Virus record (IMG/VR): IMGVR_UViG_3300032116_014939 | Span: 124,001 to 188,000 of that record | Direction: 5' to 3' (one strand) | DNA: 64,000 nucleotides | In this document: positions 18,452-62,671 of the stretch, one piece after another | Position numbering within the stretch: position 1 is the stretch's first letter | How the letters are laid out: the number at the start of each line of letters is the position of its first letter | Notes under the pieces: generated by a model | Databases searched by the model: none | What the model saw: only the letters and a program-made list of their open reading frames with translations | What the model was told of the DNA's origin: nothing | Made by a program: the position numbers and the translations under genes

Positions 18452-21400
18452 TTAAATATTTTCAAACGATGCTCCTGTTGGAGTAATTAAGAACTCAATG
18501 TCTATGAATTCAAGAGCTTTAGTTGGTTTGATATAAATCTTACCTACTAATTGGTTAGCATCTAAGTCTTCAGGTGTGTTTTGAACAGTAACTCTGAAGT
18601 CATATAAACCTCTGTCTCTTCTAATCGAATCTAAGATTGGATTAACTGAATCTAAGAACTGTTGTCTTACTAAGTTGTCGTTTTGTTCAAACAACAATCT
18701 TACCGCTACCGCTGAAATCAACTTACGAGCTTGTAATAACAATCTTCTTACGTTAATTCTGTCAAGAGCTGACTCTCTAATTTGAAGAGTTTTGTTACCC
18801 CAAATTACAGTTCCAACGTCGTTGAAAGTTGCAATTGGGTTAATTCTTCCCTTATAAAGAGTATCTCTATCTTCTTGAGTTAATCTCTTTCTTGCTCTGA
18901 TAGCATTTACAATACCTCTTGTGTAACCCGCAGTTGCGAACCATGGGAACGCTATATTGTCAGTTAACGCTAAGTTTCTTGTAACTTCAGCAGTTGATGG
19001 AATATAGATTTGAGTATTGTTTACCGTGTCACGAGTAAGAACCCATGGATAGTAAGTTGCTGTGTAATTAGAGTCAATTCCTGTATTTTCTAAATTATCA
19101 ACCGCTTCTTGTGGGTAAATTAAATTATCCATTGAAGTTGATGGTTGTAATAAGTTAAAGTCAGGAGTTGTACAGATGTAGATTGAATCCGCTCTGTCGT
19201 TTTCAACAATATCGATTGTTGCAGAAACTAAATCACTATTGTTAACATAGTCAACACCAGGTGTTACAAGAACATTGATGTTTGTTACTTCAGGATTTGC
19301 AAATGATTGTACACCTAACAAGTATGCGTAATAGTCAGTATTTGCGTAATCAACTGTGTTATCACCAACTGTGATTTGTTTAAATGCTCCCCATCCTGTA
19401 GCATCTGTGTACGGTGCACAAGATAGAGCTCCTTGTTTATATCCTGTGTTTCCTAAACGGAATCTGTCAGCGTTTGTTCTATATTCTCTGTATATATCCC
19501 ATCCGTCAAATCCTGCTTGAACAAGGAATGTAAACTTACGAGAATATAAGAAGTAATATGGACTTGTTTGTGACGTAGGTTCTGAACTAAATGAACCAGC
19601 TCCAACTTCAAATGCTGTTTGACCACTGTTTTGGTAAACATTTGCTATAACAATAGAAGTCGCTCCTGAATCCATGTGGAAACCTTTTGTAACATTTGGC
19701 CAAAATACGTGAGAAGGTGGTGTACAAGTTGCCGAATTTGGATTTGGCATCCCTTTGTATTGGAAGAAATCAGGGTCATAACCTGGTGCGTCTGATGAGA
19801 ACGCTACCGCTGAAGAAATACCTAAATAAGTTCTTCTTATGTTATCACCTGAACTAGCAGTAGTGTTAGAACCGTTAGAAGTTGTTCCAAATGGTGGGTT
19901 GTAAATAACTTCACCAGGATAGTCGTATTTTGTTTTGAAGATTTGGAATGGTGATTTTGCACCTGTGTAAGTTCTTGTTACAAAACCTTCAAATCCACAA
20001 GGAAGTGCATCTACAGGTGCCTCTTCATTTACTTCTACAAAAATATATTTCGACTGTACTGCATATTCACCATCAGATGAACCAACTTTTTTAGCCACAT
20101 AACTATTTTCAGCCGGGTCCATACTACAGTTTGTAAACTTCTCTAAAACAACAGGATTCGCATCTGTATCAAAGAAATCACGAACAATAAGGTCAAATGT
20201 ACCATTGTTAAATGATATGTTTGCAACGGACACTTTAATTTCAGTGTTCGCAGCATTACCATCAGCAATTGTATAAACTTTAAACAATCTATAAACTAAA
20301 TTACCACGTAATTCCGAAACAACCCACGGAGATTCAGGTGTTTGGTATTGCTCAAGATAATAAGCGATAGATGATGTATCATTATTTCTCGCTTCAGGTA
20401 AAGAAATTAAACTACAATTCAAACCACGAATATAACCTTTATTATAACCGTAATTTAATAATGTCGGATAACGCTCTTCAACAAACAACGGAACTTCAGT
20501 TCTATCTTTAGCGAAGTTCTCAACACCAAATACTTTAGAAATATAGTTAGCGTTACCCGCATTAAACGAAGTTTCAAATTGGAATGCTGAATTTTCATAA
20601 GTTAAACCTGAAATCAAGAATGTACTAAATGGATTTTTAGTAACTCCCGAATAAGAACCTGTACAAATCATTTGTACGTCTGAAGTACCTGTTACTTGGT
20701 AATCAGGGCCGTTTTGTGTCGATGAATAATTTGTAATACCTCTTGAACGTAAAGTTGCCACAACTAAATCATTATAACCTGAATAAGTTAAACCTGAGAA
20801 GTTATAGATATTACCTGTTATAGAACCACTATAAGAACCTGACGTACCAGTTATTGTACTAATTCTACTAAAGAACGAATAACCATTGTAATTTTCACCT
20901 GTTGTTGGAGGTGTAAATGTAGCATAATACCATACATCATTAACTTCAGAACAATAATCAATACTTGAAGCACTTATTGCATTAACACCAAATACGTTTG
21001 TAGATGCTGAATATCCAGCAGCAATGTTTGCCGTAACTTGAGCTCCCGAAACCGCTCCAAAATAATAGATGGAAGATGCTGAAGTTGAATTAGAACCAAT
21101 TACACCAAAAATTTGACTCTGAAGTTGAGCATAAATAGTTGATGAACCTCCACTATATGTTGTATAAGGAGTTGTTGCATTTGTAATTCCAACAGGTAAA
21201 CCTGTAATTGTTACTGTTGATGTTGAAGCCGTTGTACCAACAAATGTTGCGGTAAATGGTGTTGCAGTACCTGTAAGTGCAACAGTATTACAATCTACAT
21301 TAGCCACAGTTGTAATAGACCAAGATGGCCCTGCGTCATAACCTGATAATCCTAAGATTCTTGTTACAAACAATTGGTTAGATTGTTGAAGATATGACTT

Positions 21401-21643
21401 AGCAATATATGCTGCCTCATATTTTGGGATTTGTGTGTTCACAAATTTTTCAGGAGTAGTACCGCCGAAATAGGTTTCAAACTCTCCATAACTTGTGATG
21501 AAGATTGGTTCAAAAGCTGGGCCTTTTAAGGTTTCTCCAGCTATACCCAACGTGGTAATCCCAACACTTTGTGAAACAAATGATAAGTCTCTTTCTGATG
21601 TATATACACCTGGCGAGACGAAAACTTTGTTTGATGTTGCCAT
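18452..21643 (-). CDS. Tail sheath protein (T4 gp18-like), extended
   Basis: FVSPGVYTSERD start; C-terminal PWFATAGYTRG, LYKGRINPI, WGNKTLQ, LDRINVRRLL, IYIKPTKALEFIDIEF. Confidence 0.95.
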   Translation of the reverse strand: MATSNKVFVSPGVYTSERDLSFVSQSVGITTLGIAGETLKGPAFEPIFITSYGEFETYFGGTTPEKFVNTQIPKYEAAYIAKSYLQQSNQLFVTRILGLSGYDAGPSWSITTVANVDCNTVALTGTATPFTATFVGTTASTSTVTITGLPVGITNATTPYTTYSGGSSTIYAQLQSQIFGVIGSNSTSASSIYYFGAVSGAQVTANIAAGYSASTNVFGVNAISASSIDYCSEVNDVWYYATFTPPTTGENYNGYSFFSRISTITGTSGSYSGSITGNIYNFSGLTYSGYNDLVVATLRSRGITNYSSTQNGPDYQVTGTSDVQMICTGSYSGVTKNPFSTFLISGLTYENSAFQFETSFNAGNANYISKVFGVENFAKDRTEVPLFVEERYPTLLNYGYNKGYIRGLNCSLISLPEARNNDTSSIAYYLEQYQTPESPWVVSELRGNLVYRLFKVYTIADGNAANTEIKVSVANISFNNGTFDLIVRDFFDTDANPVVLEKFTNCSMDPAENSYVAKKVGSSDGEYAVQSKYIFVEVNEEAPVDALPCGFEGFVTRTYTGAKSPFQIFKTKYDYPGEVIYNPPFGTTSNGSNTTASSGDNIRRTYLGISSAVAFSSDAPGYDPDFFQYKGMPNPNSATCTPPSHVFWPNVTKGFHMDSGATSIVIANVYQNSGQTAFEVGAGSFSSEPTSQTSPYYFLYSRKFTFLVQAGFDGWDIYREYRTNADRFRLGNTGYKQGALSCAPYTDATGWGAFKQITVGDNTVDYANTDYYAYLLGVQSFANPEVTNINVLVTPGVDYVNNSDLVSATIDIVENDRADSIYICTTPDFNLLQPSTSMDNLIYPQEAVDNLENTGIDSNYTATYYPWVLTRDTVNNTQIYIPSTAEVTRNLALTDNIAFPWFATAGYTRGIVNAIRARKRLTQEDRDTLYKGRINPIATFNDVGTVIWGNKTLQIRESALDRINVRRLLLQARKLISAVAVRLLFEQNDNLVRQQFLDSVNPILDSIRRDRGLYDFRVTVQNTPEDLDANQLVGKIYIKPTKALEFIDIEFLITPTGASFENI

Positions 21644-21677
21644 TTTTATTTTAAATGTTTTTGAAAATTTATTTATT

Positions 21678-45992: not shown

Positions 45993-45996
45993 TCTT

Positions 45997-46605: not shown

Positions 46606-46614
46606 AAATAAAAT

Positions 46615-47586: not shown

Positions 47587-47594
47587 AACATACT

Positions 47595-48518: not shown

Positions 48519-48525
48519 TACATAT

Positions 48526-49350: not shown

Positions 49351-49415
49351 GATGAATAAAAACAACACTTAATGTTTACTGTATCCATATTTTTTATTAA
49401 TTTAAAATAAAAAAT

Positions 49416-49949
49416 ATGGATAAATTTGCATACGGACATGAAGTTCACACGGACATGATAGTCCAAATAGTTAAATCAATTAATTGTAAAAATTATTTAG
49501 AATTAGGTGTATATGATGGGTCAACTTTTGAAAAAGTTTCAGAAGTAGTACCTAGGGTAATTGGGGTTGATATTATTGATTTTAGAAGAAATAAAAACAT
49601 TGGTGAGTTCCATCAAACATCAACACAAGACTTTTTAAATAATTTTAATGAAATAGTAGATGTTATTTTCATAGATGCTGACCATGCGTTTGAAGCGGTT
49701 AAATTAGATTTCAAAGCATCACTTAAAAATTTAAATGAATTTGGGGTAATTATTTTACATGATACTGACCCAATTTCTGAAAAATATATTACCCGAGAAC
49801 ACTGTGAGGATTCTTATAAAATGATAGATTGGATTAAAACTGAATATCCTGAGATGGATATTTTTACATTCCCCATATCCGAAGCGGGTTTAACAATTGT
49901 CAAACGTTCTATTGACAGACGTGTTAGTAAATTTTTAAATAATGGATAA
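49416..49949 (+). CDS. Class I SAM-dependent methyltransferase
   Basis: YLELGVYDG, IGVD, DVIFIDADH, GVIILHD. Confidence 0.85.
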   Translation: MDKFAYGHEVHTDMIVQIVKSINCKNYLELGVYDGSTFEKVSEVVPRVIGVDIIDFRRNKNIGEFHQTSTQDFLNNFNEIVDVIFIDADHAFEAVKLDFKASLKNLNEFGVIILHDTDPISEKYITREHCEDSYKMIDWIKTEYPEMDIFTFPISEAGLTIVKRSIDRRVSKFLNNG

Positions 49950-49972
49950 TAAAAAAATAAATTAAAATTACC

Positions 49973-50626
49973 ATGAATAAAGAATATACTATAATTATAC
50001 CAAGCAATAGAGACTCTTTAAAAGATGAATTAATTACTCATTTAAAAAACATGGATGAAGAATCAATTTGGAAAAATGGTCACGGATACCCATCTTTCTC
50101 AAAATTAATTAATGATTGTGTTGTTGAATCACCAACAGAAACCATTATTATTTGTAATGACAAAGCTAGACCTAAAAAAGAACATATTGAAAAAATTTTA
50201 ACTCTTTTAGAACAAGGATATGGGTTTGTTGGATTATATGCGTGGGGGTTTTTTGGTTTTAAAAAAGAATTATTTAGAAATATTGGGTTTATGGATGAAA
50301 GATTTATTGGGGGTAATTATGAAGATAGTGATTACCTAAGAAGAATGATGGAGGGCAATATTGCCATGTATAATTCATTTGAAATAGATTATATCTCTAT
50401 GAGTTCAGGATGGAACATATCAAATACAAAAAACCATTTTGATAAAAAATGGGAGCATGGTGATTTACCAGGTGATAAATATGTAAAACGATTATTACCA
50501 GAAGAAACTTATGATTATAACATAGGTGAAAAAACAAACATAAAATTTCTACCATGGTCTGATTCATTTTTTAGTATTGACGTAGGTAAATCAGAAACAT
50601 TCATGGATTACAAAATAAAAATATAA
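49973..50626 (+). CDS. GT-A-like glycosyltransferase (short)
   Basis: IIIPSNR, IGFMDERFIGGNYEDSDY. Confidence 0.7.
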   Translation: MNKEYTIIIPSNRDSLKDELITHLKNMDEESIWKNGHGYPSFSKLINDCVVESPTETIIICNDKARPKKEHIEKILTLLEQGYGFVGLYAWGFFGFKKELFRNIGFMDERFIGGNYEDSDYLRRMMEGNIAMYNSFEIDYISMSSGWNISNTKNHFDKKWEHGDLPGDKYVKRLLPEETYDYNIGEKTNIKFLPWSDSFFSIDVGKSETFMDYKIKI

Positions 50627-50648
50627 AATAAATAAATTATATAAAATA

Positions 50649-51623
50649 ATGAAAGAAAAAGTTTTATTAGTAGGTGGTGCCGGTTACATCGGAGGATTAA
50701 CATCAGATTATCTTATTAGAGAAGGGTTTGATATAACTATTTACGATAATTTATTATATGAAAATAGGTATTTAAAAGATGTTTCTTTTATTTATGGAGA
50801 CATTAGAGATACTGATAAACTTTATGAAGTATCTAAAGATTTTGATATTATAGTTTTAATGGCTGCTTTAGTTGGTGACCCGGCTTGTAGTGTTGACCCA
50901 TTTTTAACTGAAGAAATTAATTATAATTCTATTAAAAATTTTTGTGATATTGTTTCACCCGATAAACATTTAATTTTCATGTCTACGTGTTCAGTTTACG
51001 GGGCTCAAGATGGTATATTAGATGAATTAAGTGAAACAAATCCATTATCATCATATGCATCAACAAAACTTAAAGCCGAAAAACACATTTTAGACAAAAA
51101 TGGGACAATTTTTAGATTAGGAACTGTATTTGGTCTTGGTGACACATATTCTAGAATTAGAATGGATTTAGTTGTTAATGTATTAACTATGAAGGCGGTA
51201 AAAGAAGGTACTATAACTATTAATGGAGGTGAACAATGGAGACCAATAATAGCAGTTAAAGATATTGCGGGATATATTACAGAGGCCTGTAAAGAAAAGT
51301 ATCCGGGAATTTTTGTTTTATCAAAAGAAAATGTTATAATTAAAGAACTAGGTGAACGTGTTGCTAAAATAGTACCTAATACTAAAGTAACGTACACTGA
51401 AATATCTTTTCAAGATGCTAGAAATTATCGTGTTGATAATTCAAAATCTTTAAAAGTTTTTAAATATAAACCAATTACAACCGTTGAGGATGAGGTATTA
51501 AGAATGGTAACTTTATTTGAAGAAAATAGAATTGAAAACCCTGAAGATAAAGTTTACCACAATGGAGCGTTTTTAACAAATAAAAAAAATCAAAAAGAAT
51601 TATTATGGACACAAAAAAATTAA
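50649..51623 (+). CDS. NAD-dependent nucleotide-sugar epimerase/dehydratase (extended SDR)
   Basis: GGAGYIG, STCSVYG, YASTK, RLGTVFG. Confidence 0.9.
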   Translation: MKEKVLLVGGAGYIGGLTSDYLIREGFDITIYDNLLYENRYLKDVSFIYGDIRDTDKLYEVSKDFDIIVLMAALVGDPACSVDPFLTEEINYNSIKNFCDIVSPDKHLIFMSTCSVYGAQDGILDELSETNPLSSYASTKLKAEKHILDKNGTIFRLGTVFGLGDTYSRIRMDLVVNVLTMKAVKEGTITINGGEQWRPIIAVKDIAGYITEACKEKYPGIFVLSKENVIIKELGERVAKIVPNTKVTYTEISFQDARNYRVDNSKSLKVFKYKPITTVEDEVLRMVTLFEENRIENPEDKVYHNGAFLTNKKNQKELLWTQKN

Positions 51624-52024
51624 TGAATGGTGGTATCTCTGTTGATGATAGAGGTTCGGTTAGATTTGTTAATGATTTCAATTTTGAAAATGTAAAGAGA
51701 TTTTACCAAGTTGAGAATCATAGACAAGGATTTATAAGAGCGTGGCATGGTCATAAAAAAGAAGGGAAATATGTTTATGTATCTAGTGGTACCGCACTTA
51801 TTGGAATTGTTAATATGGAAACTGAAGAAATTACAAAATATATTTTAAGTGCAAGACAACCAAAAGTATTATTTATCCCACCGAATCATTATAATGGTTT
51901 TAAAAATTTGGAAGAAAATACTTCAGTTATTTTCTTTTCTACTACATCATTAGAAGAAAGTTTAGGTGACGATATAAGATTACCACATGATAATTGGAAT
52001 ATATGGGAAGAAGATTTTAGATAA
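51605..52024 (+). CDS. rmlC: dTDP-4-dehydrorhamnose 3,5-epimerase-like cupin
   Basis: DDRG, IRAWHGH, LFIPP..YNGF. Confidence 0.75.
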   Translation: MDTKKLMNGGISVDDRGSVRFVNDFNFENVKRFYQVENHRQGFIRAWHGHKKEGKYVYVSSGTALIGIVNMETEEITKYILSARQPKVLFIPPNHYNGFKNLEENTSVIFFSTTSLEESLGDDIRLPHDNWNIWEEDFR

Positions 52025-52049
52025 AAAAAATAAAAAAAGTAAAAAAATT

Positions 52050-52874
52050 ATGAAAATTTATATTTTAGGTTCAAAAGGTATGTTAGGTAAATATGTTTAC
52101 ACTTATTTATCTGAAAAATTTAATGTTAATGAAATTAACAGAGATGTTCTTGACGCATCTCAACAGACAGAAAAAACATTAGAAGAAATTTTAATCAATT
52201 GTGGAGTAAATCAGGGTGATGTTATTATAAATTGTATTGGTACAATTAAACCAAGAGTTGACCAATTAGGTGACTTAAACGCAATTTTAGTAAACTCAGT
52301 TTTTCCAAGATTATTAGCTAATGTTTGTGAGAAAAATGAATGGAATATGATTCATCCAACAACTGATTGTGTCTTTTCAGGTAAAAAAGGTAGATATGAT
52401 GAAAAAGATAAATATGATGTTGATGATGTATATGGTATGTCTAAAGCTATGGGAGAACCAAGTAATTGTACAATAATAAGAACTTCAATAATTGGTGAAG
52501 AAGTTAATCAACATAGGTCTTTAGTTGAATGGGTTAAAAGTCAAAAAAATAATACAGTTAATGGTTTTTTAAATCATTTTTGGAATGGTATTACTTGTTT
52601 AGAATGGGCTAAATTAGTGGAAAAAATTATTGATAACAAAGATTTTTGGAAAGGGATTAAACATTTTGTTTCACCAACTCAAGTTACAAAATACGATTTA
52701 GTAAAAATGATATCAAATTCATATGAATTAAATATTGGTATTAACGCCATGAATTCAGAATTAACTGTTGATAGAACTTTATCGACTATTTTTGATACAA
52801 AATATGATATACCTGAGTTGGAATTTCAAATAAATGAAATGCAATCATTCTCAAAAAAGTTACACAAAAATTAA
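52050..52874 (+). CDS. rmlD: dTDP-4-dehydrorhamnose reductase-like; start moved to ATG 52050
   Basis: GSKGMLG, TTDCVFSG, YGMSK, RTSIIG. Confidence 0.85.
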   Translation: MKIYILGSKGMLGKYVYTYLSEKFNVNEINRDVLDASQQTEKTLEEILINCGVNQGDVIINCIGTIKPRVDQLGDLNAILVNSVFPRLLANVCEKNEWNMIHPTTDCVFSGKKGRYDEKDKYDVDDVYGMSKAMGEPSNCTIIRTSIIGEEVNQHRSLVEWVKSQKNNTVNGFLNHFWNGITCLEWAKLVEKIIDNKDFWKGIKHFVSPTQVTKYDLVKMISNSYELNIGINAMNSELTVDRTLSTIFDTKYDIPELEFQINEMQSFSKKLHKN

Positions 52875-54460: not shown

Positions 54461-55519
54461 ATGGAAGAAACAATTAAAAAAATTGAAGATTCAATTAAAA
54501 ATTTGAGTGAAAAAAAATCAAGAATTTATTTTTTCGCTCAAGATACTTTAGGGAACGCTAAAGCGTCAATCAAATACATTTATGATATGGCATTAACACT
54601 TAAAAATGCCGGTTATAATGTCATTATTTTACATGAAAAACCTAATTATTTTGGAGTACAAAGTTGGTTAGGAAATAAATATGATTCTATTCCCCACCAA
54701 TCAGTAGAAGGACAAAATTTACAAATAGCGCCTGAAGATTTTATGATTATTCCTGAAATTTTTGGTTACGTTATGAGTCAATTAACAAACTTACCTTGTA
54801 CTAAAATCGTATTGTCACAGTCTTATGACTATATATTTGAAACTCTTCAACCAGGACAAACTTGGCAACAATTTAACTTTACAAAGTGTATCACAACTTC
54901 AGAAGAGCAAAAAAATTATGTTTCAAAATTAATGAGAATGAGTGCTGTTGACGTTATTGAACCAGTAATCGATGAGAATTTTGTTGTTTCTGAAAAACCT
55001 GTTAAACCAATTATTTCGGTTGTGTTTAGAGAACAAAGAGATTCAATTAATTTTATCAAGTCGTTCTATCAAAAGTATCCACAATTTAGATGGATTACTT
55101 TCCGTGATTTAAGAGGTTTATCTCAAGAAGAATTTGCAAGTTCATTAAGAGAATCTATGTTGTCAGTATGGAACGATAGAATTAGTTCTTTTGGTACCTT
55201 CCCATTAGAATCTATGAAGAGTGGTGTAGCAGTTATGGGTGTAGTTCCAAAACTAATTCCAAGTTGGTTAAGCGAAGAAAACGGAATTTGGATACAAGAT
55301 GAAATAAAACTTGTAGACTATGTTGCAGATTTTGTTCAAAATTGGTTAGAAGATAATGTTTCTGAAAATCTTTACAAGAATGGTATTGAAACTTCGGAAA
55401 AATATAGTGATGTAGAAAAATTTGAAAAGACAATTTTATCAACGTTTGAAGGTTATCTTCAAGTTATAAAAGAAAATTTTGAAACTGAATTAAATAAACT
55501 ACAATTAATTGAAAATTAA
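54461..55519 (+). CDS. Glycosyltransferase, GT-B-like
   Basis: IIPEIF, VLSQ, FGTFPLESMKSG acceptor/donor loop. Confidence 0.7.
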   Translation: MEETIKKIEDSIKNLSEKKSRIYFFAQDTLGNAKASIKYIYDMALTLKNAGYNVIILHEKPNYFGVQSWLGNKYDSIPHQSVEGQNLQIAPEDFMIIPEIFGYVMSQLTNLPCTKIVLSQSYDYIFETLQPGQTWQQFNFTKCITTSEEQKNYVSKLMRMSAVDVIEPVIDENFVVSEKPVKPIISVVFREQRDSINFIKSFYQKYPQFRWITFRDLRGLSQEEFASSLRESMLSVWNDRISSFGTFPLESMKSGVAVMGVVPKLIPSWLSEENGIWIQDEIKLVDYVADFVQNWLEDNVSENLYKNGIETSEKYSDVEKFEKTILSTFEGYLQVIKENFETELNKLQLIEN

Positions 55520-55523
55520 TATT

Positions 55524-56330
55524 ATGGAAAATATTTTAGATTTAAGTGTTATATTACCTATTAAAAGTATGGTAATGAGAGATTTTGAGGATTTCTTTAA
55601 AAAATCAATTGAGTCTGTACAATCTCAAGAGTTCTTACCAAAAAACTTAATTATAGTTCATGGTAAAGATAAAAATTTATCGGATTATTTGAAAAAATAT
55701 GATTTTCAAAATCTTAAAGTAACAACTTTTGAATTTGATGGAGAACCAAATTTTTCAAATCAGGTTAATTTTGGAATTACAAAAGCTGAAACTAAATGGG
55801 TTAGTATTCTAGAAGTTGACGATGAATACTCAAAAATTTGGTTTAAAAATGTAAAAAAATATTTAGATTCATATTCTGATGTTGACGCATTTTTACCTAT
55901 CGTAGTTGAGGTAGATAATAAATTAACCTTCCAAGGATTTACAAACGAAGCTACATTTGCGGCTAATTTCTCACAAGAAATGGGATATCTAACAAATGAA
56001 ACTTTATTACAATATCAAAATTTTCAAACATCAGGAATGGTATTCAAAAAATCTCTAATTGAAGATTTTGGTGGATTTAAACCAAGCATTAAATTAACAT
56101 TTGTTTATGAATTGTTACTTCGTTTAACGTACAATTCGGCTAAAATTATGACTATTCCTAAAATTGGTTACAAACACACTAATTTAAGAGAAGGTTCTAT
56201 TTTTTGGGAATACAAAAATGGTGAAACCAAACTTGAAGAAAATGAGGTTAAGTTTTGGGTATCTTCAGCTAAAAAAGAATATTTTTTTAGTGAAGACAGA
56301 AACATAAAATTTGTTCCTGAAAATGCTTAA
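55524..56330 (+). CDS. GT2 glycosyltransferase
   Basis: LSVILP, QVNFGI, ILEVDDEY, GGFKPS, YKHTN. Confidence 0.8.
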   Translation: MENILDLSVILPIKSMVMRDFEDFFKKSIESVQSQEFLPKNLIIVHGKDKNLSDYLKKYDFQNLKVTTFEFDGEPNFSNQVNFGITKAETKWVSILEVDDEYSKIWFKNVKKYLDSYSDVDAFLPIVVEVDNKLTFQGFTNEATFAANFSQEMGYLTNETLLQYQNFQTSGMVFKKSLIEDFGGFKPSIKLTFVYELLLRLTYNSAKIMTIPKIGYKHTNLREGSIFWEYKNGETKLEENEVKFWVSSAKKEYFFSEDRNIKFVPENA

Positions 56331-57094: not shown

Positions 57095-57457
57095 ATGACA
57101 AAACCAAAAAAGAAACAAATAAATTTTACACAGGACTCAATTTTAGCTCTGATGCAGGAAATTTATAATGAGTTAGTTGAACAACGCTCCACCGCAATTA
57201 GAATTCAAAATAAAATGATTTCTATGATGAAAGAGCCTGAAGACATGACTGTTATAGGCCCGGTTATTGAAAAACAACAAAAAATCATAAATGATTGTGT
57301 TGAGAAAAAACTTACGTTATCTAAGTTACAATCAGGTATATGGGAAAAAAGAAGTAATTCCGAAGAAACTTTTGATATTTCATCTATGGATGATGATATT
57401 CTACAGGGTCTAATTTCAAAGGATATAAATTCAGATATTGAAAAATTTAATCTGTAA
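57095..57457 (+). CDS. Hypothetical helical late protein
   Basis: ORF after the late motif, coupled to the next gene. Confidence 0.75.
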   Translation: MTKPKKKQINFTQDSILALMQEIYNELVEQRSTAIRIQNKMISMMKEPEDMTVIGPVIEKQQKIINDCVEKKLTLSKLQSGIWEKRSNSEETFDISSMDDDILQGLISKDINSDIEKFNL

Positions 57458-59379
57458 TGGCAGAGGATATCAGACAAGGTTTTAAAGAAAGTAAAGCAAG
57501 GGCTAAAGCCGTCAAAACTTTTACGCAAGTACAAAAGGATTATGAAGGGTTTATACAGAACAATACTGATAGATTACAAAAAAAAGCGGAAAACATTCAA
57601 ATAAATTTAGATTCCGCAACAATTTCAAGAAAAATTAAAGAAAAAACAAGTAATTCGTTTGAAGAATTAATTGATTTAATTGGTCAAACAAATACTAACC
57701 CAAATAATGATTTTTTTATTAATATTTTAAAAAATCAATTACAGAATTTACCAACTTTAATTGAAGGTATTATCGAAGAGTGTGTTTTTAGCTCATTGAA
57801 TTGTTCTAATGAACAAACTTATTTAACAAATCAAGAACTATATATTCAAGTAAGTGAAATTGATTTATTTAATCAACTTAAATTAAGTCCTGATAGTTCC
57901 ATTGGTGCTTCAATATATGAAAAAATACCGTATGACCCATTAGCATCAAGAAGAAGTACTAACAGGTTTTTATACGAATTAATTCAAACACCATCAGTTC
58001 CGCAAGTTTACTACGGTTCATCAGGTCAAGAATTATTTAAAATTTCTTTTGAAACTTTTAACGGAGTTACTCAGGGGAATTATTTTAAAGTAGTTTTATA
58101 CCAAAGAATAAATGCTCCAAATAGAGTAACAGATTTTATTATTGATTATTATAAAACTCTAAAAATGTTAGATTTTAATAATGCGATAAATAAAATAGTT
58201 GATTTAATTTTAAACATAACAAAATTTAATTCAAATACCGGACCTTCAAAATATAATGATTGGTTAAAATTCACTAGAATACTTGAAAGAATTTTAGGAA
58301 TGTGTTTTGATTCTAACCAAGAGATTGATGTTGGGGGTATTGCAAAATATCCTGAATATGATGATGTTACTGACACATTTTTTGAATTTACACCAAATGA
58401 AATTTCTCAAATTGAGAACGAAATTTCTATCATAAGACAGGGTTATGTTGAATTTATTGATTGTAATAATGTTCAATTACCAATTAGTGATGTTGATTAT
58501 GTTTTTGACACTATAAGTGAAGTCAATGAAGATGGAAGTAATATTAATACAATATTTCAAGATATCTATTTTAATTTATCTAATGATGATAGATGGCAAT
58601 TACAAGGTATTTCTCTTGATTACGCTTGGAATCAAGGAATAATTAAAAACTTTGTTAAAGGTGCAATGATGTCAATTTTATCACCAAAAGTCCTATTACC
58701 TTTTGTGGTTATGTCTAAAGCACTTTCAACCACTGTTTCCAATTTAGATGAAAACATTGTAAACGATTTAGAAGCAAGTTCACCAGGAATGATGCAGTTT
58801 GCAAAATTGAACAGAAAAATGATAATCTGTGCTACCTCAAAAATAGGTGCGTTATTTATTGAAGCATTATATGAACAATTCAAACAGGATATTCTTAAAT
58901 TAGTTAAATCAATATTAAGAGATTTGATTGTGACTAAAACAAAAATGCAAAAAAATGCAATTCAATCAATTTTAGATAATACAGAGGCAATTATTAGAGG
59001 AGTAGTTAGTTTAGTTAATGACTATCGAAGTTGTAAATCACTACTTAATGCAATTTTTAATCTATTAAAATTAACTCCAATACCTAGAAAATATATTTTA
59101 CCAACACCATTTTTATATTTAACTGAATATCTATCTGGAGTTTTACCTCAAAAAGAAGTTGTTGAATACATTTTACAAATGCAACAACTTGGGATACCAA
59201 CAGGCCCGGGTATTAATGGTGAGCCTGACTTAGGAACCCTTGAGAAAATTGCGGTCTTTACAGCATCTTTTAATGAAAGGACTAAAAATGGTAAAATTGA
59301 AGGTGTTATAGTTACTGAAACAATTTCACCTACAGGTCAACCAACAGGAAATGTAAGAGTAACAGGAAAATATTTTTAA
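57457..59379 (+). CDS. Hypothetical virion/baseplate-associated protein
   Basis: 640 aa ORF in the late operon before the spike-like gene. Confidence 0.7.
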   Translation: MAEDIRQGFKESKARAKAVKTFTQVQKDYEGFIQNNTDRLQKKAENIQINLDSATISRKIKEKTSNSFEELIDLIGQTNTNPNNDFFINILKNQLQNLPTLIEGIIEECVFSSLNCSNEQTYLTNQELYIQVSEIDLFNQLKLSPDSSIGASIYEKIPYDPLASRRSTNRFLYELIQTPSVPQVYYGSSGQELFKISFETFNGVTQGNYFKVVLYQRINAPNRVTDFIIDYYKTLKMLDFNNAINKIVDLILNITKFNSNTGPSKYNDWLKFTRILERILGMCFDSNQEIDVGGIAKYPEYDDVTDTFFEFTPNEISQIENEISIIRQGYVEFIDCNNVQLPISDVDYVFDTISEVNEDGSNINTIFQDIYFNLSNDDRWQLQGISLDYAWNQGIIKNFVKGAMMSILSPKVLLPFVVMSKALSTTVSNLDENIVNDLEASSPGMMQFAKLNRKMIICATSKIGALFIEALYEQFKQDILKLVKSILRDLIVTKTKMQKNAIQSILDNTEAIIRGVVSLVNDYRSCKSLLNAIFNLLKLTPIPRKYILPTPFLYLTEYLSGVLPQKEVVEYILQMQQLGIPTGPGINGEPDLGTLEKIAVFTASFNERTKNGKIEGVIVTETISPTGQPTGNVRVTGKYF

Positions 59380-59380
59380 T

Positions 59381-59575
59381 ATGTCAGAAAAAATAAAAGA
59401 AATATTAGTTGAATATAAAACTAAATCAAACAAAGATTTGGTATTAGCAATGGATTTTTTATCAAAAGAATTTGATAATACCAAACATTTAGTTATTGAA
59501 TTAACAAAAAAAATTGATAAAATAGAATCAACATATAACAAAATTTTAAAAGAATATGAGTCAAGGAAGGGATGA
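59381..59575 (+). CDS. Small coiled-coil protein
   Basis: Heptad pattern LSKEFDNTKHLVIELTKKIDKIESTYNKIL. Confidence 0.65.
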   Translation: MSEKIKEILVEYKTKSNKDLVLAMDFLSKEFDNTKHLVIELTKKIDKIESTYNKILKEYESRKG

Positions 59576-61145
59576 CCAACAAAAACATAGGATATTATTT
59601 GGAGGTACTGTTACCCATAATGAAGACAAATATTCATTAGAACGTATTAGAGTTAAACCTGATTTTGAAATTTACCAACAAGTAATTGATTCACTTAAAG
59701 ATATTACAAAAAATGGTAAATCAGTTTTAAATGCTCAAGGTAATGATATTTTAGAAGAATTTTTTTACGAAGATGTCGACCCTTTTGTTTATATTCCTTT
59801 AATTCCTGTTCAATTAAATATTGTTCCTGAAAATAATGATTATGTTCATTTAATTTATTATAATTGGTCTGAAAATACAGGAAGAAAAAATCAATTTTAT
59901 ATTAAAGGCCCGATATCATCAGCAATGTCTGTTGCTCGTGAAAATTCAAACCAAACAAAAAGTATTATGGCGGCAGGGCCTAATGTTAAACCAGGTTTAC
60001 CATTAAAAAATTCAAATGGATACTTTTTTGAAAACACTAAAGGGGTATTTGCTGAACCAAAAGATTATGGAATTTATTCTAAAGGAAGGTCTGATATTAT
60101 TTTAAAAGATAATGAAGTTTTATTAAGGTCAAAAAAAACACCAATATTAAAAACAAATGAATACCCTGTAACGAATCCTAAAAGGTCTTTTTTACAATTA
60201 TCTAATTTTGATTCTAAAACAACCAAAGGGACACAAAAAACAATTACTCAAAATTCAACAGTATCTGAACAAATTGTTAAACTTGTTGAGTATGAAATTT
60301 ATTATGGATTGGATACTGAAGGCCCATTTTCAGGTAACATTAACATATATAATTTACCCGGAAAGTCCCCAAATACTTTAACAGATAGATTTACACAACA
60401 AACAGTTATTGACGATGTTACATATACGTATTTTTCACATTCTTTTAATAACATTGATACTCTACAAGAAGTATCTGATATAATTAATAAAGTGATATCA
60501 GGATTAAATGACGGACTAATTAATATTGATTACTTAACGCCAAGAGAAACTGTAAATGTTACAGATGTTAGATTTCCATTTTTCTTTAGACCATCATTAT
60601 CTTTACAAAAAAAATCACTAATTGGTAGTGACCTCGAAAAGAAAAATACAAATACTTTAATTTCATTAATAGCATTTCCGAAATCACAGAAATTAACAAA
60701 CCCTGGTTCAGGATTAATTTCAAGTAAAAATAAATACGGATTAAAAAAGGTTTCAAAGAAAGTAAAATACACTCCTAATGTAAGTCAAAACGGTGATTTT
60801 GGTTACGCAGTAATGGGGTCTGAAAAAATATTTTTAATATCTAACAATTCAAATATTCCAGGATTAGAAAAAATCCAATTAAAAAATTCAGATGTTTATG
60901 GTATTAATGAACCTACTTTATCAGGAAATTATTATAATTCAACAAACTCTATGGTTAGAGGAGAATCGTTAAAAGATTTATTGGCATTAATTGTGAGATT
61001 TTTATTAAATCATCAACACCTATATCATAGAGAAACTCCATTTGAATTAACAAGGGAAACTTCTCCAATATCTAAGACAAAATTAACATCTGAATGGAAA
61101 TTATTCGATACTAAAGTATTAAATCAAAATATTCGTATAAATTGA
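59556..61145 (+). CDS. Baseplate central spike-like protein (gp5/VgrG OB-fold N-terminus)
   Basis: GTVTHNEDKYSLERIRVK...PLIP..LNIVP...YVHLIY; GRSDIILKDNEVLLRS. Confidence 0.55.
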   Translation: MSQGRDDQQKHRILFGGTVTHNEDKYSLERIRVKPDFEIYQQVIDSLKDITKNGKSVLNAQGNDILEEFFYEDVDPFVYIPLIPVQLNIVPENNDYVHLIYYNWSENTGRKNQFYIKGPISSAMSVARENSNQTKSIMAAGPNVKPGLPLKNSNGYFFENTKGVFAEPKDYGIYSKGRSDIILKDNEVLLRSKKTPILKTNEYPVTNPKRSFLQLSNFDSKTTKGTQKTITQNSTVSEQIVKLVEYEIYYGLDTEGPFSGNINIYNLPGKSPNTLTDRFTQQTVIDDVTYTYFSHSFNNIDTLQEVSDIINKVISGLNDGLINIDYLTPRETVNVTDVRFPFFFRPSLSLQKKSLIGSDLEKKNTNTLISLIAFPKSQKLTNPGSGLISSKNKYGLKKVSKKVKYTPNVSQNGDFGYAVMGSEKIFLISNNSNIPGLEKIQLKNSDVYGINEPTLSGNYYNSTNSMVRGESLKDLLALIVRFLLNHQHLYHRETPFELTRETSPISKTKLTSEWKLFDTKVLNQNIRIN

Positions 61146-61153: not shown

Positions 61154-61165
61154 TAAAAAGAGTAA

Positions 61166-62671
61166 ATGTCAATACATCGTTCATATTTTAGTAGGAACAA
61201 TACAATAATTTCAAATAGTTTTACCAACACTGGTAAATCACCTTATACGCAATTATATTTTGGTTCAGCATCTGATGTAATTGCGTCCCCTGGATTTAGT
61301 AGATTTATCTTTGATTTAGATTTATCATTACTTGTACAAAAAATCCAAGACGGAATAATATCAACAGGATGTACAGGTTTTTCAGGTATCACTCATACAT
61401 TAAAAATGACCAACACATCTTCTTTTGATAAAGATGGGTTAAGTAATGAATACACATCACAAGGAAGATTAAGAGCAACATCATTTGACTTAGTTTTATT
61501 TAGAATACCTCTTACTTCAGGTAATACAGGAACTGCTCAAACGTGGGATGAAGGTGTTGGATATGATTACTATGATGTTCAACGTACTTTAAATTCAACT
61601 AATGGTTTATTATCACCAATAGCTTTACCACAAGATAAAGCATATTCTCAAAGACCTTCTAATTGGTATCAAACAACAACATTAGATAATTGGTCAACAC
61701 CCGGAATATACAATAATACAAACACAGGAACAGGGTCAACAATTAATTATTCGGCGTTAACAATTGTTGATACTCAACATTTTGAATTTGGGAATGAAGA
61801 TATTGAGTTTGATATGACAAATGAAATCAATCGAATTCTTACCGGTACAACAACTGGGTCAACAGGATGGGGAGTTGCTTTTTTACCCGAATTAGAAAAT
61901 TTAACAGGTTTAACTGAAAACTATTCAGTAGGATTTTTTACAAGGCATACCCAAACTTTCTACGAACCATTTCTTGAAACAAATTATAACGATTTAATAC
62001 TTGATAATCGAAACGCTTTTTATTCTTACAACAATAATAAATTATACTTGTATTCTTACATAGGTGGTGTACCAACAAATTTGGATAATTTACCGATTGT
62101 TACCTTAGAAAATAATCAAGGTAACACTATTGGTACTTATACGGGGTGTCAAATTACTCAAGGTGTTTATGAAATAACAACTAATTCTGTTTCAGCAACA
62201 ACACCTTGTATGTTTACAGATACTTGGTCAAATCTTTATTATAACGGTATACAAATACCTAATGTAGTTAATGATTTAACTGTTTTACCATACACTGGTT
62301 ATTTTACTCTTGGGCCTAATAGTCAAGACCCTGAACTTTTTGGTTTTGATTTTTACGGTATTAAACAAGATGAAAAAATATTAAATACTGATTTAAGAAA
62401 AGTTGGTGTTGTTGTTAAAAAAGCGTACACATCTAATCAAGTATTAACACCTGTAACTGTTTATTACCGAGTTTATGTTAAAGAGGGTCAAACAGAAGTA
62501 CAAGTTCAAGATTGGACACAAGTAAACAGAGCGTCAAATGAATATTATTTCATCTTTGATACAAGAGATAAAATACCTAATGAATATTCAATAGATATTA
62601 AAGTACTTACATCAGGTGAAGTAGATACTTATAAGAAAACACTAACATTCCAAATAGTTGATAAGAAATGA
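61166..62671 (+). CDS. Putative virion structural protein, beta-rich and Thr/Gly-rich
   Basis: SRFIFDLDL, TWDEGVG, FFTRHT; seven [ST]GxT motifs. Confidence 0.65.
   Translation: MSIHRSYFSRNNTIISNSFTNTGKSPYTQLYFGSASDVIASPGFSRFIFDLDLSLLVQKIQDGIISTGCTGFSGITHTLKMTNTSSFDKDGLSNEYTSQGRLRATSFDLVLFRIPLTSGNTGTAQTWDEGVGYDYYDVQRTLNSTNGLLSPIALPQDKAYSQRPSNWYQTTTLDNWSTPGIYNNTNTGTGSTINYSALTIVDTQHFEFGNEDIEFDMTNEINRILTGTTTGSTGWGVAFLPELENLTGLTENYSVGFFTRHTQTFYEPFLETNYNDLILDNRNAFYSYNNNKLYLYSYIGGVPTNLDNLPIVTLENNQGNTIGTYTGCQITQGVYEITTNSVSATTPCMFTDTWSNLYYNGIQIPNVVNDLTVLPYTGYFTLGPNSQDPELFGFDFYGIKQDEKILNTDLRKVGVVVKKAYTSNQVLTPVTVYYRVYVKEGQTEVQVQDWTQVNRASNEYYFIFDTRDKIPNEYSIDIKVLTSGEVDTYKKTLTFQIVDKK

What the first reader, a model, noticed from the sequence alone, without database searches (positions are those of the whole stretch)
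18452..62671. [ST]-G-x-T motif strongly enriched in three virion proteins: candidate O-glycosylation sequon
Seen (hand count): 13 copies in the LamG protein (SGNT x2, TGET, TGYT x2, SGYT x2, TGVT, TGIT, TGST, TGLT, SGLT, SGQT), 7 in ORF 61166 (TGCT, SGIT, SGNT, TGST x2, TGTT, TGLT) and 5 in the sheath (SGLT x2, SGVT, SGAT, SGQT). I noticed only scattered single copies in enzymes. A rough composition-based expectation for the LamG protein is 1-2. It differs from the Bacteroidota host sequon D-(S/T)-(A/I/L/V/M/T). Inference: a recognition motif for the phage's own glycosyltransferases.
Basis: partly seen in the sequence, partly recalled or inferred. Interest (0 to 1): 0.75.

Follow-up and report, generated by a model that had tools for sequence, protein, structure and literature searches.

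The report
Recurring S/T-G-x-T motif in virion proteins
A four-residue motif (Ser/Thr-Gly-any-Thr) is 5-12 times over-represented in the tail, fibre, sheath and head proteins of a large group of uncultured aquatic jumbo phages; it is present or absent by lineage regardless of protein fold, and the best but unproven explanation is that it marks where the phage's own glycosyltransferases attach sugars.

Summary
Enrichment is robust for the LamG-like protein and ORF 61166, but marginal for this window's sheath alone. In the 242-kb genome all excess sits in about ten tail, fibre or head proteins; the rest of the proteome is at expectation. [ST]-[GA]-x-T is the top-ranked three-position pattern in five proteins with no detectable similarity. 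The signal is protein-level and absent from T4 and from Flavobacterium phage immuto.

Across relatives the motif behaves like a short linear signal. Both hydroxyl positions are kept, N or D does not replace position 1, most sites turn over while density is kept, and density co-varies among unrelated proteins of one phage (rho 0.65). A marine sister lineage has the same syntenic virion module with no enrichment (about 66 observed, 69 expected), so the folds do not need the motif.

All six near-complete motif-rich genomes carry a rare PF13712 glycosyltransferase. None was found in about 650 kb of fragments from the motif-free lineage, but coverage is incomplete. The large sugar island is hypervariable and does not track the motif. 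No structural or chemical evidence of glycosylation exists. The O-glycosylation sequon reading is the best explanation (about 0.45) but unproven.

The parts
31195..34119 (-). LamG-like (concanavalin-like, sub-threshold) protein of 974 aa, probably an exposed virion or fibre protein. It has 13 [ST]GxT sites at aa 77, 119, 151, 162, 176, 270, 291, 374, 380, 461, 549, 571 and 673.
   Evidence: Searches give 13 observed against 2.14 expected (1.12 for aa 1-705). In one search, 120 homologs average 9.8 sites against 1.2 expected, and sites 151, 270, 291, 374 and 380 are kept in at least 96%. In one search the Pfam Laminin_G_3 hit is only 16.8 bits. In one search the gene is preceded by the TATTTAT upstream element.
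31615..31983 (-). Pro/Thr-rich linker (aa ~713-835) within the LamG-like protein. It contains no [ST]GxT motif and is a classical mucin-like candidate region for O-glycosylation.
   Evidence: Read directly from the sequence. In one search, T-P-[ST] is the top pattern of the whole protein (26 observed, 2.5 expected).
61166..62671 (+). ORF 61166, 501 aa, a phage-specific protein rich in beta-sandwich domains and of unknown role. It lies in a conserved block next to the head genes. It has 7 sites at aa 67, 73, 118, 189, 226, 230 and 247.
   Evidence: Searches give the counts. In one search homologs average 6.1 sites against 0.74 expected. One search gives an AF2 model with pLDDT 63 in which the sites lie in loops or at strand N-caps. 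In one search the best fold match is an uncharacterised myovirus protein (TM 0.71). In one search remote homologs carry 0 to 8 sites.
18452..21643 (-). Tail sheath protein, 1063 aa, with 5 sites at aa 283, 332, 345, 659 and 673. All lie in the lineage-specific insertion (aa ~100-720), outside the conserved sheath core.
   Evidence: In some searches, Pfam and PHROG sheath matches cover aa 731-1061. One search gives 5 observed against 1.7 expected (P 0.027), and one search gives window-shuffle P of 0.08-0.11. In some searches, orthologs have 3-9 sites against 1.4-1.8 expected, all within aa 129-673. Sheaths of the motif-free lineage have 0 sites.
39280..40785 (+). Two-domain glycosyltransferase (N-terminal PF13712 Glyco_tranf_2_5 plus C-terminal PF00535 GT2), with no predicted membrane segment. 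It is the best candidate for the motif-recognising enzyme.
   Evidence: One search gives the domains. In one search it is syntenic after dUTPase in all 80 relatives with enough flank. In one search the N-terminal half is conserved at 43-58% in G001-G003. In some searches PF13712 is present in every near-complete motif-rich genome and in 0 of 14 control genomes. It was not found in fragments of the motif-free lineage.
40785..52874 (+). Hypervariable sugar-biosynthesis and GT island: GT4, UDP-GlcNAc 2-epimerase, two GT2-like genes, a hexapeptide acyltransferase, a DegT-like aminotransferase, GDP-mannose 4,6-dehydratase, a methyltransferase, an NDP-sugar epimerase/reductase, RmlC-like and RmlD-like genes, and unknown ORFs.
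   Evidence: Searches give the Pfam assignments. In one search the island is absent from G001 and G002 and mostly absent from G003, and no protein has a predicted TM segment. In one search close relatives (98% LamG identity) carry 47-51% identical alleles of the first two GTs.
55509..56330 (+). Conserved single-domain GT2, a core gene of the clade. It lies in the block unk208-unk352-GT2-unk245-unk120-unk640-unk529-ORF 61166.
   Evidence: One search gives the PF00535 hit. In one search it is 57-64% identical across G001-G003. In some searches it is present in motif-rich and motif-free lineages alike, so it cannot by itself explain the motif.
57457..61145 (+). Two unknown proteins (640 and 529 aa) between the conserved GT2 and ORF 61166. 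They have no motif copies here, but their orthologs carry the motif in other lineages.
   Evidence: One search gives 0 copies here. In one search the orthologs in L187 and L172 have 3 observed against 0.27 expected and 2-3 against 0.4. In one search the G010 ortholog has 5 against 0.37.
16964..17452 (-). Tail tube protein, 162 aa, an internal virion part with 0 motif copies (contrast case).
   Evidence: One search gives the match to phrog_4542 (tail tube). One search gives 0 copies.

Best explanation
[ST]-G-x-T (degenerate form [ST]-[GA]-x-[TS]) is a short linear recognition motif on the exposed virion proteins of this phage clade: sheath insertion domain, baseplate and fibre proteins, the LamG-like protein, ORF 61166 and the capsid protein. 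Most likely it is an acceptor sequon for cytoplasmic O-glycosylation by a phage-encoded soluble glycosyltransferase.

Proposed mechanism (inferred, not shown): the PF13712-domain GT attaches a first sugar to a Ser or Thr of the motif on virion proteins in the host cytoplasm. Further GTs then extend it using nucleotide sugars made by the adjacent island (6-deoxy, amino, N-acetyl and O-methyl sugars). The island is swapped between lineages, giving variable glycans on a constant set of attachment sites. The result would be a glycan coat on the tail and head surface.

Shown: the motif's enrichment, specificity, turnover, lineage-level on/off behaviour and independence from fold, and the presence of soluble GTs. 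Inferred: that the motif is modified at all, which enzyme reads it, and which of the two hydroxyl residues is the acceptor.
For: 1. Enrichment is real, protein-level and specific. The counts are 13 observed against 1.1 expected, 7 against 1.0, 12 against 1.3 and 8 against 0.8. The rest of the proteome shows 34 against 36. Codon usage at the sites matches background and the other five reading frames show no enrichment. The signal survives local-composition shuffles.

2. The same pattern ranks first in five proteins that share no BLAST similarity and have no internal repeats. In T4 and immuto each fibre protein has its own idiosyncratic repeat motif instead.

3. The substitution pattern is specific. 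Position 1 swaps S and T, but NG.T and DG.T are nearly absent. Position 4 is T, less often S, and rarely V. The only abundant neighbouring patterns are [ST]A.T and [ST]G.S.

4. Sites turn over while density is kept. The LamG family has 49 distinct motif columns, against 10-26 for permuted controls. Most sites are private to one of four genomes.

5. It is a lineage-level trait. Motif count in ORF 61166 homologs predicts observed/expected in the other genes of the same locus (0.91, 1.50, 2.09, 3.69 across classes; rho 0.65, P 3e-9). The capsid protein follows the same trend (rho 0.38).

6. A marine sister lineage has the same syntenic virion module with no enrichment. G008 shows 15 observed against 15.4 expected, G015 11 against 9.8, G022 7 against 6.4, G023 17 against 13.8, G027 11 against 11.3 and G028 5 against 12.5. 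Its sheath, capsid, g62404, g100985, g104890 and g106720 orthologs have 0-1 copies where other lineages have 6-19.

7. The sites sit on exposed parts. All sheath sites are in the insertion domain, while the tube and hub have none. In the ORF 61166 model the sites lie in loops or at strand caps.

8. A rare PF13712 GT is present in all six near-complete motif-rich genomes (G000-G003, G006, G011), and also in G009, G010, G012 and G014. It is present in 0 of 14 control genomes. It was not found in 15 fragments (about 650 kb in sum) of the motif-free lineage, where dUTPase abuts PhoH at the canonical site.

9. No cluster protein has a predicted TM segment, so there is no flippase or oligosaccharyltransferase, which fits direct cytoplasmic transfer. 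No ThyA-like hydroxymethylase was found that would point to DNA glycosylation.

10. The LamG-like protein also has a mucin-like PT linker. Virion glycosylation by phage GTs has a published precedent in mycobacteriophages (cited in PMC12619734).
Against: There is no chemical evidence that any site is modified, and no solvent-accessibility data. The LamG model failed (pLDDT 37.7). The ORF 61166 model is only moderate, and several of its sites fall in segments below pLDDT 50.

The sugar island that prompted the idea does not co-vary with the motif. The conserved GT2 at 55509 is present in the motif-free lineage. Flavobacterium phage immuto has five GTs but no enriched protein.

Absence of PF13712 in the motif-free lineage rests on fragments that leave part of the genome unsampled. 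A remote ORF 61166 homolog with 0 motifs (L140) has a PF13712 gene 10 kb away, although single-protein counts proved to be a noisy proxy.

The GT block sits among nucleotide-metabolism genes (exonuclease, dUTPase, PhoH) and lacks the TATTTAT upstream element that precedes the virion genes. PF13712 is known in the literature only from lipooligosaccharide loci.

The lineage comparisons are not phylogenetically independent. The motif-free lineage is marine, so habitat or host is confounded with motif state.
Confidence: 0.45

Rival explanations
1. The motif is a structural micro-motif: a Gly-containing turn or strand N-cap with hydroxyl capping residues. It is favoured in the beta-rich exposed domains of this clade for folding, stability or solubility, and has nothing to do with glycosylation.
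For: In the one usable model the sites lie at loop/strand junctions. The residues at position -1 and at x are often hydrophobic, consistent with strand edges. Fibre proteins of other phages also carry extremely over-represented short patterns from structural repeats, such as H.EG at 1e-19 and H.H[ST] at 1e-9. T4 gp37 shows mild enrichment (6 observed, 2.1 expected). Some copies belong to known domain signatures, for example TGGTPPY in SprB repeats.
Against: Orthologs of every enriched protein exist without the motif in a sister lineage. Remote ORF 61166 homologs of the same fold family have 0 to 8 copies. The motif recurs in proteins with no detectable similarity and no internal repeats. Sites turn over rapidly. 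N and D, the usual equivalents of S and T in capping turns, do not substitute at position 1. Density co-varies across unrelated proteins of one genome, which a per-protein structural need does not predict.
Confidence: 0.22
2. The motif is read by a different trans-acting factor. This could be another modification of Ser or Thr (phosphorylation, acylation, ADP-ribosylation), a docking site for a phage decoration, chaperone or lectin protein, or a feature selected by a host-side factor such as a protease, a receptor or a defence sensor that differs between host groups.
For: The lineage-level on/off behaviour, the turnover and the hydroxyl requirement call for a trans-acting reader but do not identify it. 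The motif-free lineage differs in habitat, and probably in host (marine samples). The conserved unknown genes flanking the 55509 GT2 have no assigned function.
Against: No kinase or other Ser/Thr-modifying enzyme was recognised among the annotated window genes. GTs are the only recognised protein-modifying candidates, and a rare GT domain tracks the motif-rich genomes.
Confidence: 0.15
3. The enrichment is a post-hoc artefact of picking one pattern among many in Thr/Ser/Gly-rich proteins.
For: The motif was chosen by eye after reading the sequence. These proteins are rich in T, S and G. The sheath count alone is not significant after local-composition control.
Against: It is the top-ranked of 59,049 patterns, with a Bonferroni-corrected P of about 1e-5 in LamG aa 1-705. 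It replicates independently in ORF 61166, g62404, g104890 and g93651. It also replicates in hundreds of homologs and in five further genomes with orthologs 27-63% identical. Permuted motifs are flat.
Confidence: 0.01

Closest known systems
Mycobacteriophage virion glycosylation (Freeman et al. 2023, as cited in PMC12619734)
   Same: Phage-encoded glycosyltransferases would modify the phage's own virion proteins inside the host cytoplasm, producing a surface glycan coat. The GT genes are carried in the phage genome rather than borrowed from the host.
   Different: In that system the glycans are reported at the C-termini of the capsid and tail tube subunits of siphoviruses that infect Actinobacteria. 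Here the candidate sites are internal, defined by a four-residue motif, and spread over sheath, baseplate, fibre and head proteins of a T4-like jumbo myovirus that probably infects Bacteroidota. The tube has no sites. Nothing has been shown chemically here.
Bacteroidota general O-glycosylation (sequon D-(S/T)-(A/I/L/V/M/T))
   Same: It is a short Ser/Thr-centred sequon used on many unrelated proteins, in the likely host phylum.
   Different: That sequon is not enriched here (2 observed against 4.1 expected, 0 against 2.3, and 5 against 4.1). The host system acts on exported proteins using a lipid-linked glycan. The phage cluster has no membrane proteins, and virions assemble in the cytoplasm.
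Cytoplasmic glycosylation of flagellins and adhesins by soluble GTs (for example GT2-type flagellin O-GlcNAc transferases, HMW1C-type N-glycosyltransferase) - from general knowledge, not tested here
   Same: Soluble GTs modify many surface-exposed Ser, Thr or Asn residues of proteins before export or assembly. The glycan gene islands are hypervariable.
   Different: Flagellin O-glycosylation has no strict sequon. The NGT enzymes use N-x-S/T, which is not enriched here. The phage GTs show only generic GT2 or PF13712 similarity.
Glycan-shield sequon dynamics of enveloped animal viruses (N-x-S/T gain, loss and shifting) - analogy from general knowledge
   Same: Site density is maintained while individual positions turn over, and the sites are concentrated on exposed surfaces.
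   Different: The chemistry, enzymes and host differ. Here the modification itself is hypothetical.
Collagen-like Thr-glycosylated fibres (Bacillus exosporium BclA-type GxT triplets) - from general knowledge
   Same: Two giant proteins of this genome have (G-S-S)n collagen-like tracts. In these tracts, triplets with L, I or N at X carry T at Y in 29 of 39 cases, which recreates S-G-x-T.
   Different: Most motif copies (95 sites) lie outside the collagen tracts, in globular proteins. The triplet pattern may be inherited through repeat duplication.

Membership tests
Bacteroidota general O-glycosylation targets | Enrichment or presence of the sequon D-(S/T)-(A/I/L/V/M/T) on the modified proteins | tested here: not met
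   2 observed against 4.1 expected (LamG-like), 0 against 2.3 (ORF 61166) and 5 against 4.1 (sheath).
Bacteroidota general O-glycosylation targets | Lipid-linked glycan assembly with a flippase and transfer outside the cytoplasm (membrane proteins in the locus) | tested here: not met
   none of the 30+ proteins of window 36793-63643 has a 19-aa segment with Kyte-Doolittle mean of 1.6 or more. This is a crude hydropathy test only.
Phage virion glycosylation of the mycobacteriophage type | Phage-encoded GT genes present in the genome | tested here: met
   PF13712+PF00535, GT4, three further GT2 or GT2-like genes, and nucleotide-sugar enzymes.
Phage virion glycosylation of the mycobacteriophage type | Glycans demonstrably attached to virion proteins (capsid and tail tube C-termini) | not testable with these tools
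   No mass-spectrometry or staining data are available. The tail tube here (16964-17452) has no motif copy.
Sequon-type acceptor motif (general definition) | Short linear pattern over-represented on the substrate set and not elsewhere in the proteome | tested here: met
   the excess is confined to about 10 virion-type proteins, while the rest of the proteome shows 34 observed against 36 expected.
Sequon-type acceptor motif (general definition) | Independent of protein fold, with gain and loss of sites while density is kept | tested here: met
Sequon-type acceptor motif (general definition) | Presence of the motif co-varies with presence of the modifying enzyme across genomes | tested here: inconclusive
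   The PF13712 GT is in all 6 near-complete motif-rich genomes. It is not seen in 15 fragments of the motif-free lineage, but those fragments do not cover the whole genome. The 55509 GT2 and the sugar island do not co-vary with the motif.
Sequon-type acceptor motif (general definition) | Acceptor residues solvent-exposed on the folded or assembled protein | tested here: inconclusive
   The sheath sites all lie in the non-core insertion. In the ORF 61166 model the sites are in loops or strand caps, but several fall in regions below pLDDT 50. The LamG model was unusable.
T4-like (gp23-type) myovirus | gp23-family major capsid protein, contractile sheath, tail tube, baseplate hub | tested here: met
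   PF07068 Gp23 with E 7e-73; sheath; tube and hub. The nearest cultured capsid protein is from Flavobacterium phage immuto, at 41% identity.
Laminin-G / concanavalin-like lectin domain protein | Pfam Laminin_G_3 match above the gathering score | tested here: not met
   16.8 bits against a cut-off of 27.6, over only 23 residues. The 'LamG' label is tentative.

The most novel reading that the evidence does not exclude
A large, globally distributed clade of uncultured aquatic T4-like jumbo phages coats its whole exposed virion surface (sheath, baseplate, fibres, head) with O-linked glycans. The glycans are attached at a defined four-residue sequon, [ST]-G-x-T, by a phage-encoded cytoplasmic PF13712-type glycosyltransferase. 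A swappable sugar-gene island sets the glycan type, and whole lineages have switched the system off. This would be the first sequon-defined protein glycosylation system of a phage, and a phage analogue of a viral glycan shield.
Probability: 0.4. Interest if true: 0.85.

Novelty: new variant of a known kind. Interest (0 to 1): 0.7.

Why it matters
Glycosylation of phage particles by the phage's own enzymes is documented in very few systems, and no acceptor sequon is known for any of them. If [ST]-G-x-T is such a sequon, three things follow.

First, glycosylated virion proteins and surfaces could be predicted from sequence alone across thousands of environmental phage genomes.

Second, it would point to a specific, rare GT family (PF13712) as a protein O-glycosyltransferase, with a simple peptide substrate suited to in vitro work and glyco-engineering.

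Third, it would explain why these phages carry O-antigen-like hypervariable sugar islands: surface variation of the virion rather than of DNA or of the host envelope.

Independent of mechanism, one result already stands. A four-residue motif behaves as a lineage-wide, fold-independent trait of virion proteins, with a natural motif-free control lineage. That gives a clean comparative system for experiments.

Tried and rejected
1. Similarity search of the LamG-like protein and ORF 61166 against 50,697 cultured or deposited phage records found no match.

2. Profile searches of both families against PDB sequences gave nothing useful.

3. The AF2 model of LamG aa 1-705, built from a 25-sequence alignment, had pLDDT 37.7 and was unusable. 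Both prediction jobs were then spent, so the sheath, g62404 and g104890 could not be modelled.

4. A Foldseek search of the ORF 61166 model against the PDB gave only generic tandem beta-sandwich hits with TM below 0.2.

5. I expected Flavobacterium phage immuto to serve as a GT-less control. It has its own GT cluster, so it serves only as 'GTs without motif'.

6. Hypothesis that the sugar island at the dUTPase/PhoH junction drives the motif: rejected. Motif-rich homologs (7 copies) occur where dUTPase abuts PhoH.

8. Using the ORF 61166 homolog's motif count as a proxy for a genome's state proved unreliable (G016, G010 and G011).

10. A DNA-level cause (favoured oligonucleotide or frame-independent signal) was rejected.

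11. Domain duplication or a shared domain as the cause was rejected.

12. Collagen G-x-T triplets as the cause account for only a minority of sites.

13. T4-type late promoter timing of the GT genes could not be resolved. The abundant upstream element TATTTAT is absent from the GT block, but its timing class is unknown.

14. Literature searches for a phage or bacterial [ST]GxT sequon, and for PF13712 function, found nothing relevant.

15. No complex prediction was submitted. An enzyme-substrate contact of this kind is unlikely to be scored meaningfully.

Full report
**What the window is.** The window is positions 124,001-188,000 of a 242,064-bp single-contig virus record with about 32% G+C. 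It belongs to a T4-like myovirus. The major capsid protein is of the gp23 family and lies just beyond the window (PF07068, E 7e-73). The window holds a contractile sheath at 18452-21643, a tail tube at 16964-17452, a baseplate hub at 16121-16873 and a family-B DNA polymerase. The nearest cultured capsid proteins are those of the Flavobacterium 'immuto' phages, at 41% identity. Several fibre-like proteins carry SprB repeats, PKD and F5/8-C domains. A Bacteroidota host is therefore plausible but not proven. Both focal proteins have thousands of homologs, all from uncultured environmental phages with contigs up to about 300 kb.

**Check of the observation.** There are 13, 7 and 5 copies, against expectations of 2.14, 1.03 and 1.70, and only four more copies in the other 51 ORFs. 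The LamG-like protein contains a Pro/Thr-rich linker (aa ~713-835) that inflates its Thr content. All 13 sites lie upstream of it, so for aa 1-705 the expectation falls to 1.12 (P = 2.4e-10).

To allow for post-hoc choice of the motif, I scored all 59,049 three-position patterns of the same form. [ST]G.T ranks first in LamG aa 1-705. The near-identical [ST][AG].T ranks first in ORF 61166. Nothing similar stands out in the sheath. Permutations of the motif, N-x-[ST] and the Bacteroidota sequon are all flat.

Shuffling residues only within 10-40-aa windows keeps the signal for the LamG-like protein and ORF 61166 (P <= 0.0008). It leaves this window's sheath at P = 0.08-0.11.

An empirical null adds a caveat. 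Single fibre proteins of other phages also reach extreme best-pattern P-values because of internal structural repeats, for example an immuto tail spike with H.EG at 1e-19 and T4 gp37 with H.H[ST] at 1e-9. An extreme P in one protein is therefore not unusual. What is unusual is that the same pattern ranks first in five proteins of this genome: the LamG-like protein without its linker, ORF 61166, g62404, g104890 and the fibre g93651. These share no BLAST similarity and have no internal repeats.

**Extent within the genome.** A scan of all 251 ORFs places the whole excess in about ten proteins. Most lie outside the window, in a minus-strand block of baseplate and fibre genes at genome 62-106 kb. 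Examples are 12 observed against 1.26 expected, 8 against 0.82, 22 against 7.7, 6 against 1.2 and 9 against 3.0. The remaining proteome shows 34 against 36. Replication enzymes, the sugar enzymes, the tube, the hub and the large proteins next to the tube are not enriched.

Codon usage at the sites matches the background, at least a dozen different hexamers encode the first two residues, and the other five reading frames show no excess. The signal is therefore selected at the protein level. Two giant proteins carry collagen-like (G-S-S)n tracts in which G-[LIN]-T triplets recreate the motif, but 95 sites lie outside such tracts.

**Behaviour across relatives.** In 120 homologs of each focal protein the enrichment holds: a mean of 9.8 copies against 1.2 expected, and 6.1 against 0.74. 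Some sites are nearly invariant (LamG 151, 270, 291, 374, 380; ORF 61166 118, 230, 247). At those sites position 1 swaps S and T, G is occasionally A, x is free, and position 4 is T and rarely S.

Family-wide, the motif occupies 49 distinct alignment columns, against 10-26 for permuted motifs. The only abundant neighbouring patterns are [ST]A.T and [ST]G.S. NG.T and DG.T are almost absent. [ST]G.V is rare in the LamG family (0.05 per sequence) but not in the ORF 61166 family (0.83 per sequence). N and D normally stand in for S and T in capping turns, so this argues for a specific need for the two hydroxyl groups.

I fetched whole genomes of five relatives whose orthologs are 27-63% identical: G001-G003, G006 and G011. 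G011 is complete, with terminal repeats. All show the same proteome-wide excess, 2.1 to 3.15 times expectation after masking collagen tracts, and in the same orthologous module. Most individual sites are private to one genome. Sheath orthologs carry 3, 9, 7, 7 and 9 copies against 1.4-1.8 expected.

**Controls from other phages.** The structural half of T4 shows 25 observed against 19.6 expected, with gp37 at 6 against 2.1. Flavobacterium phage immuto shows 87 against 50, with no protein above 5 against 1.3, even though it encodes five GTs and sugar enzymes. The enrichment is therefore neither a general property of T4-like fibres nor an automatic consequence of carrying GT genes.

**A natural experiment.** An exhaustive profile search found 742 clusters of ORF 61166 relatives. 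Full-length remote homologs carry anywhere from 0 to 8 copies. Across 67 non-identical loci, the count in this protein predicts the observed/expected ratio in the other genes of the same locus. The ratio rises through 0.91, 1.50, 2.09 and 3.69 across classes (Spearman rho 0.65, P 3e-9), and the capsid protein follows the same trend (rho 0.38). In syntenic loci the motif appears together in four proteins, or in none of them.

Single-protein counts are nonetheless noisy. G016 has none in its ORF 61166 homolog but 56 against 12.7 overall.

One lineage is truly motif-free. It comes from marine samples and is typified by P0257. Its fragments show 15 observed against 15.4 expected, 11 against 9.8, 7 against 6.4, 17 against 13.8, 11 against 11.3 and 5 against 12.5. 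Its sheath, capsid, g62404, g100985, g104890, g106720 and g108515 orthologs have 0-3 copies, where other lineages have 6-19.

These proteins therefore fold and assemble without the motif. The motif is a lineage-level trait affecting many unrelated proteins in parallel. That is what a trans-acting reader predicts, and what a per-protein structural requirement does not.

**Link to glycosyltransferases.** The cluster is real. It comprises:
- a two-domain GT (PF13712 + GT2) at 39280
- a GT4 and a UDP-GlcNAc 2-epimerase
- GT2-like genes
- an acyltransferase and a DegT-like aminotransferase
- GDP-mannose 4,6-dehydratase
- a methyltransferase
- an epimerase/reductase
- RmlC-like and RmlD-like genes
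- a separate GT2 at 55509

None of these proteins has a predicted membrane segment, and no ThyA-like hydroxymethylase is present in the genome. This favours direct cytoplasmic transfer to a soluble acceptor over lipid-linked export or classical DNA glucosylation.

The details cut both ways:

- The island at 40785-52874 is hypervariable. It is missing from G001 and G002, is mostly different in G003, and its first genes are replaced by 47-51% identical alleles in relatives that are 96-100% identical in the flanks. It does not track the motif. Motif-rich homologs occur where dUTPase directly abuts PhoH.
- The GT2 at 55509 is a core gene that is also present in the motif-free lineage.
- The PF13712 domain is found in none of 14 control genomes but in every near-complete motif-rich genome (G000-G003, G006, G011), and also in G009, G010, G012 and G014. 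In G006 it lies beside a relocated GT cluster.
- PF13712 was not found in 15 fragments of the motif-free lineage (about 650 kb in sum). Apart from the 55509-type gene, those fragments contain no GT2 above threshold.
- The fragments do not cover the whole genome, and the 236-kb contig of that lineage could not be searched. The correlation is therefore suggestive only.
- The GT block also lacks the TATTTAT upstream element that precedes the virion genes.
- In the literature PF13712 is known only from lipooligosaccharide loci.

**Structure.** The ORF 61166 model (pLDDT 63, pTM 0.62) places all seven sites in loops or at the N-terminal caps of strands. None lies in the middle of a strand, but three fall in segments below pLDDT 50. 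Its only close fold matches are uncharacterised myovirus proteins. The LamG model failed. Exposure of the sites is therefore supported only indirectly: by the sheath insertion domain, by the absence of sites from the tube and hub, and by loop positions in one model.

**Verdict.** It is a clade-wide, fold-independent, protein-level motif on exposed virion proteins, and there is a natural motif-free control lineage. The interpretation as an O-glycosylation sequon read by the phage's own enzymes is the best available explanation (about 0.45). It is unproven. A structural micro-motif (about 0.22) and another trans-acting reader (about 0.15) remain open. Chance is excluded.

Noticed in passing
window 31615-31983 (-), aa ~713-835 of the LamG-like protein: A long Pro/Thr-rich (PT/PTPS/TNTPT) linker separates the conserved N-terminal 705 aa from a small C-terminal domain. 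Homologs replace everything after about aa 640-705 with C-terminal parts of very different length (total lengths 550-2013 aa). The linker is itself a classical candidate for O-glycosylation.
   Followed up: partly
G000 genome-wide; in the window before 34119(-), 61166(+), 21643(-), 18384(-), 13902(-), 15956(-), 25309(+), 26838(+), 34167(+), 57095(+): The upstream element (A/G)TATTTAT(A/T) lies 11-26 nt before the start codons of about 60 of 251 ORFs. The 8-mer ATATTTAT precedes 45 genes against 2.5 expected. It is absent from the whole plus-strand GT and sugar block (36793-57067). It is probably a phage promoter class, but its timing is unknown.
   Followed up: partly
window 39280-52874 compared with L009, L026, L044 and G001-G003: The GT and sugar island between dUTPase and PhoH behaves like an O-antigen locus. 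In relatives with 96-100% identical flanks, the first two GTs are only 47-51% identical (allelic replacement). In more distant relatives the whole island has different content, or sits elsewhere in the genome (G006 at 155-165 kb).
   Followed up: partly
G000 genome 70258-78168 (-) and 78319-84315 (-), outside the window (L001, L002): Two giant proteins (2636 and 1998 aa) each have about 500 collagen-like G-X-Y triplets, mostly GSS and GTS. When X is L, I or N, Y is T in 29 of 39 triplets, against about 6% when X is S.
   Followed up: partly
window 31195-34119 (-), aa ~280-400 and 540-630: The LamG-like protein is unusually Cys-rich for a cytoplasmically assembled phage protein (2.9% Cys, many invariant). 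It has short similar stretches (LTFTG-C..TTG.C/PTT..TG[IL]TY) around two motif sites.
   Followed up: no
L136 16699-16893 (marine relative, motif-free lineage): A ribosomal protein S21 gene (PF01165) lies among the head genes of this phage contig.
   Followed up: no
L138 7748-10294 (remote relative): An IMPDH-like gene appears split into two pieces by an insertion carrying Hint_2 and NUMOD3 domains. This suggests an intein or homing-endonuclease insertion.
   Followed up: no
G028 (L436-L438), motif-free lineage: This contig is not merely unenriched but depleted (5 observed against 12.5 expected). Three Thr/Ser/Gly-rich proteins are each expected to carry 1.7-2.1 copies and have none, which may indicate avoidance of the motif.
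   Followed up: no
window 45997-46605 (+): The DegT/DnrJ/EryC1-type aminotransferase ORF is only 202 aa and matches only profile positions 166-243 of 360. It may be a truncated or split gene within the sugar island.
   Followed up: no
L003 5805-7985 and L001 4602-6632 (genome 98805-100985 and 64602-66632): Phage fibre-like proteins carry SprB repeats, a Bacteroidota gliding-motility adhesin repeat whose consensus (TGGTxPY) itself contains the motif. This gives an independent hint of a Bacteroidota host.
   Followed up: partly
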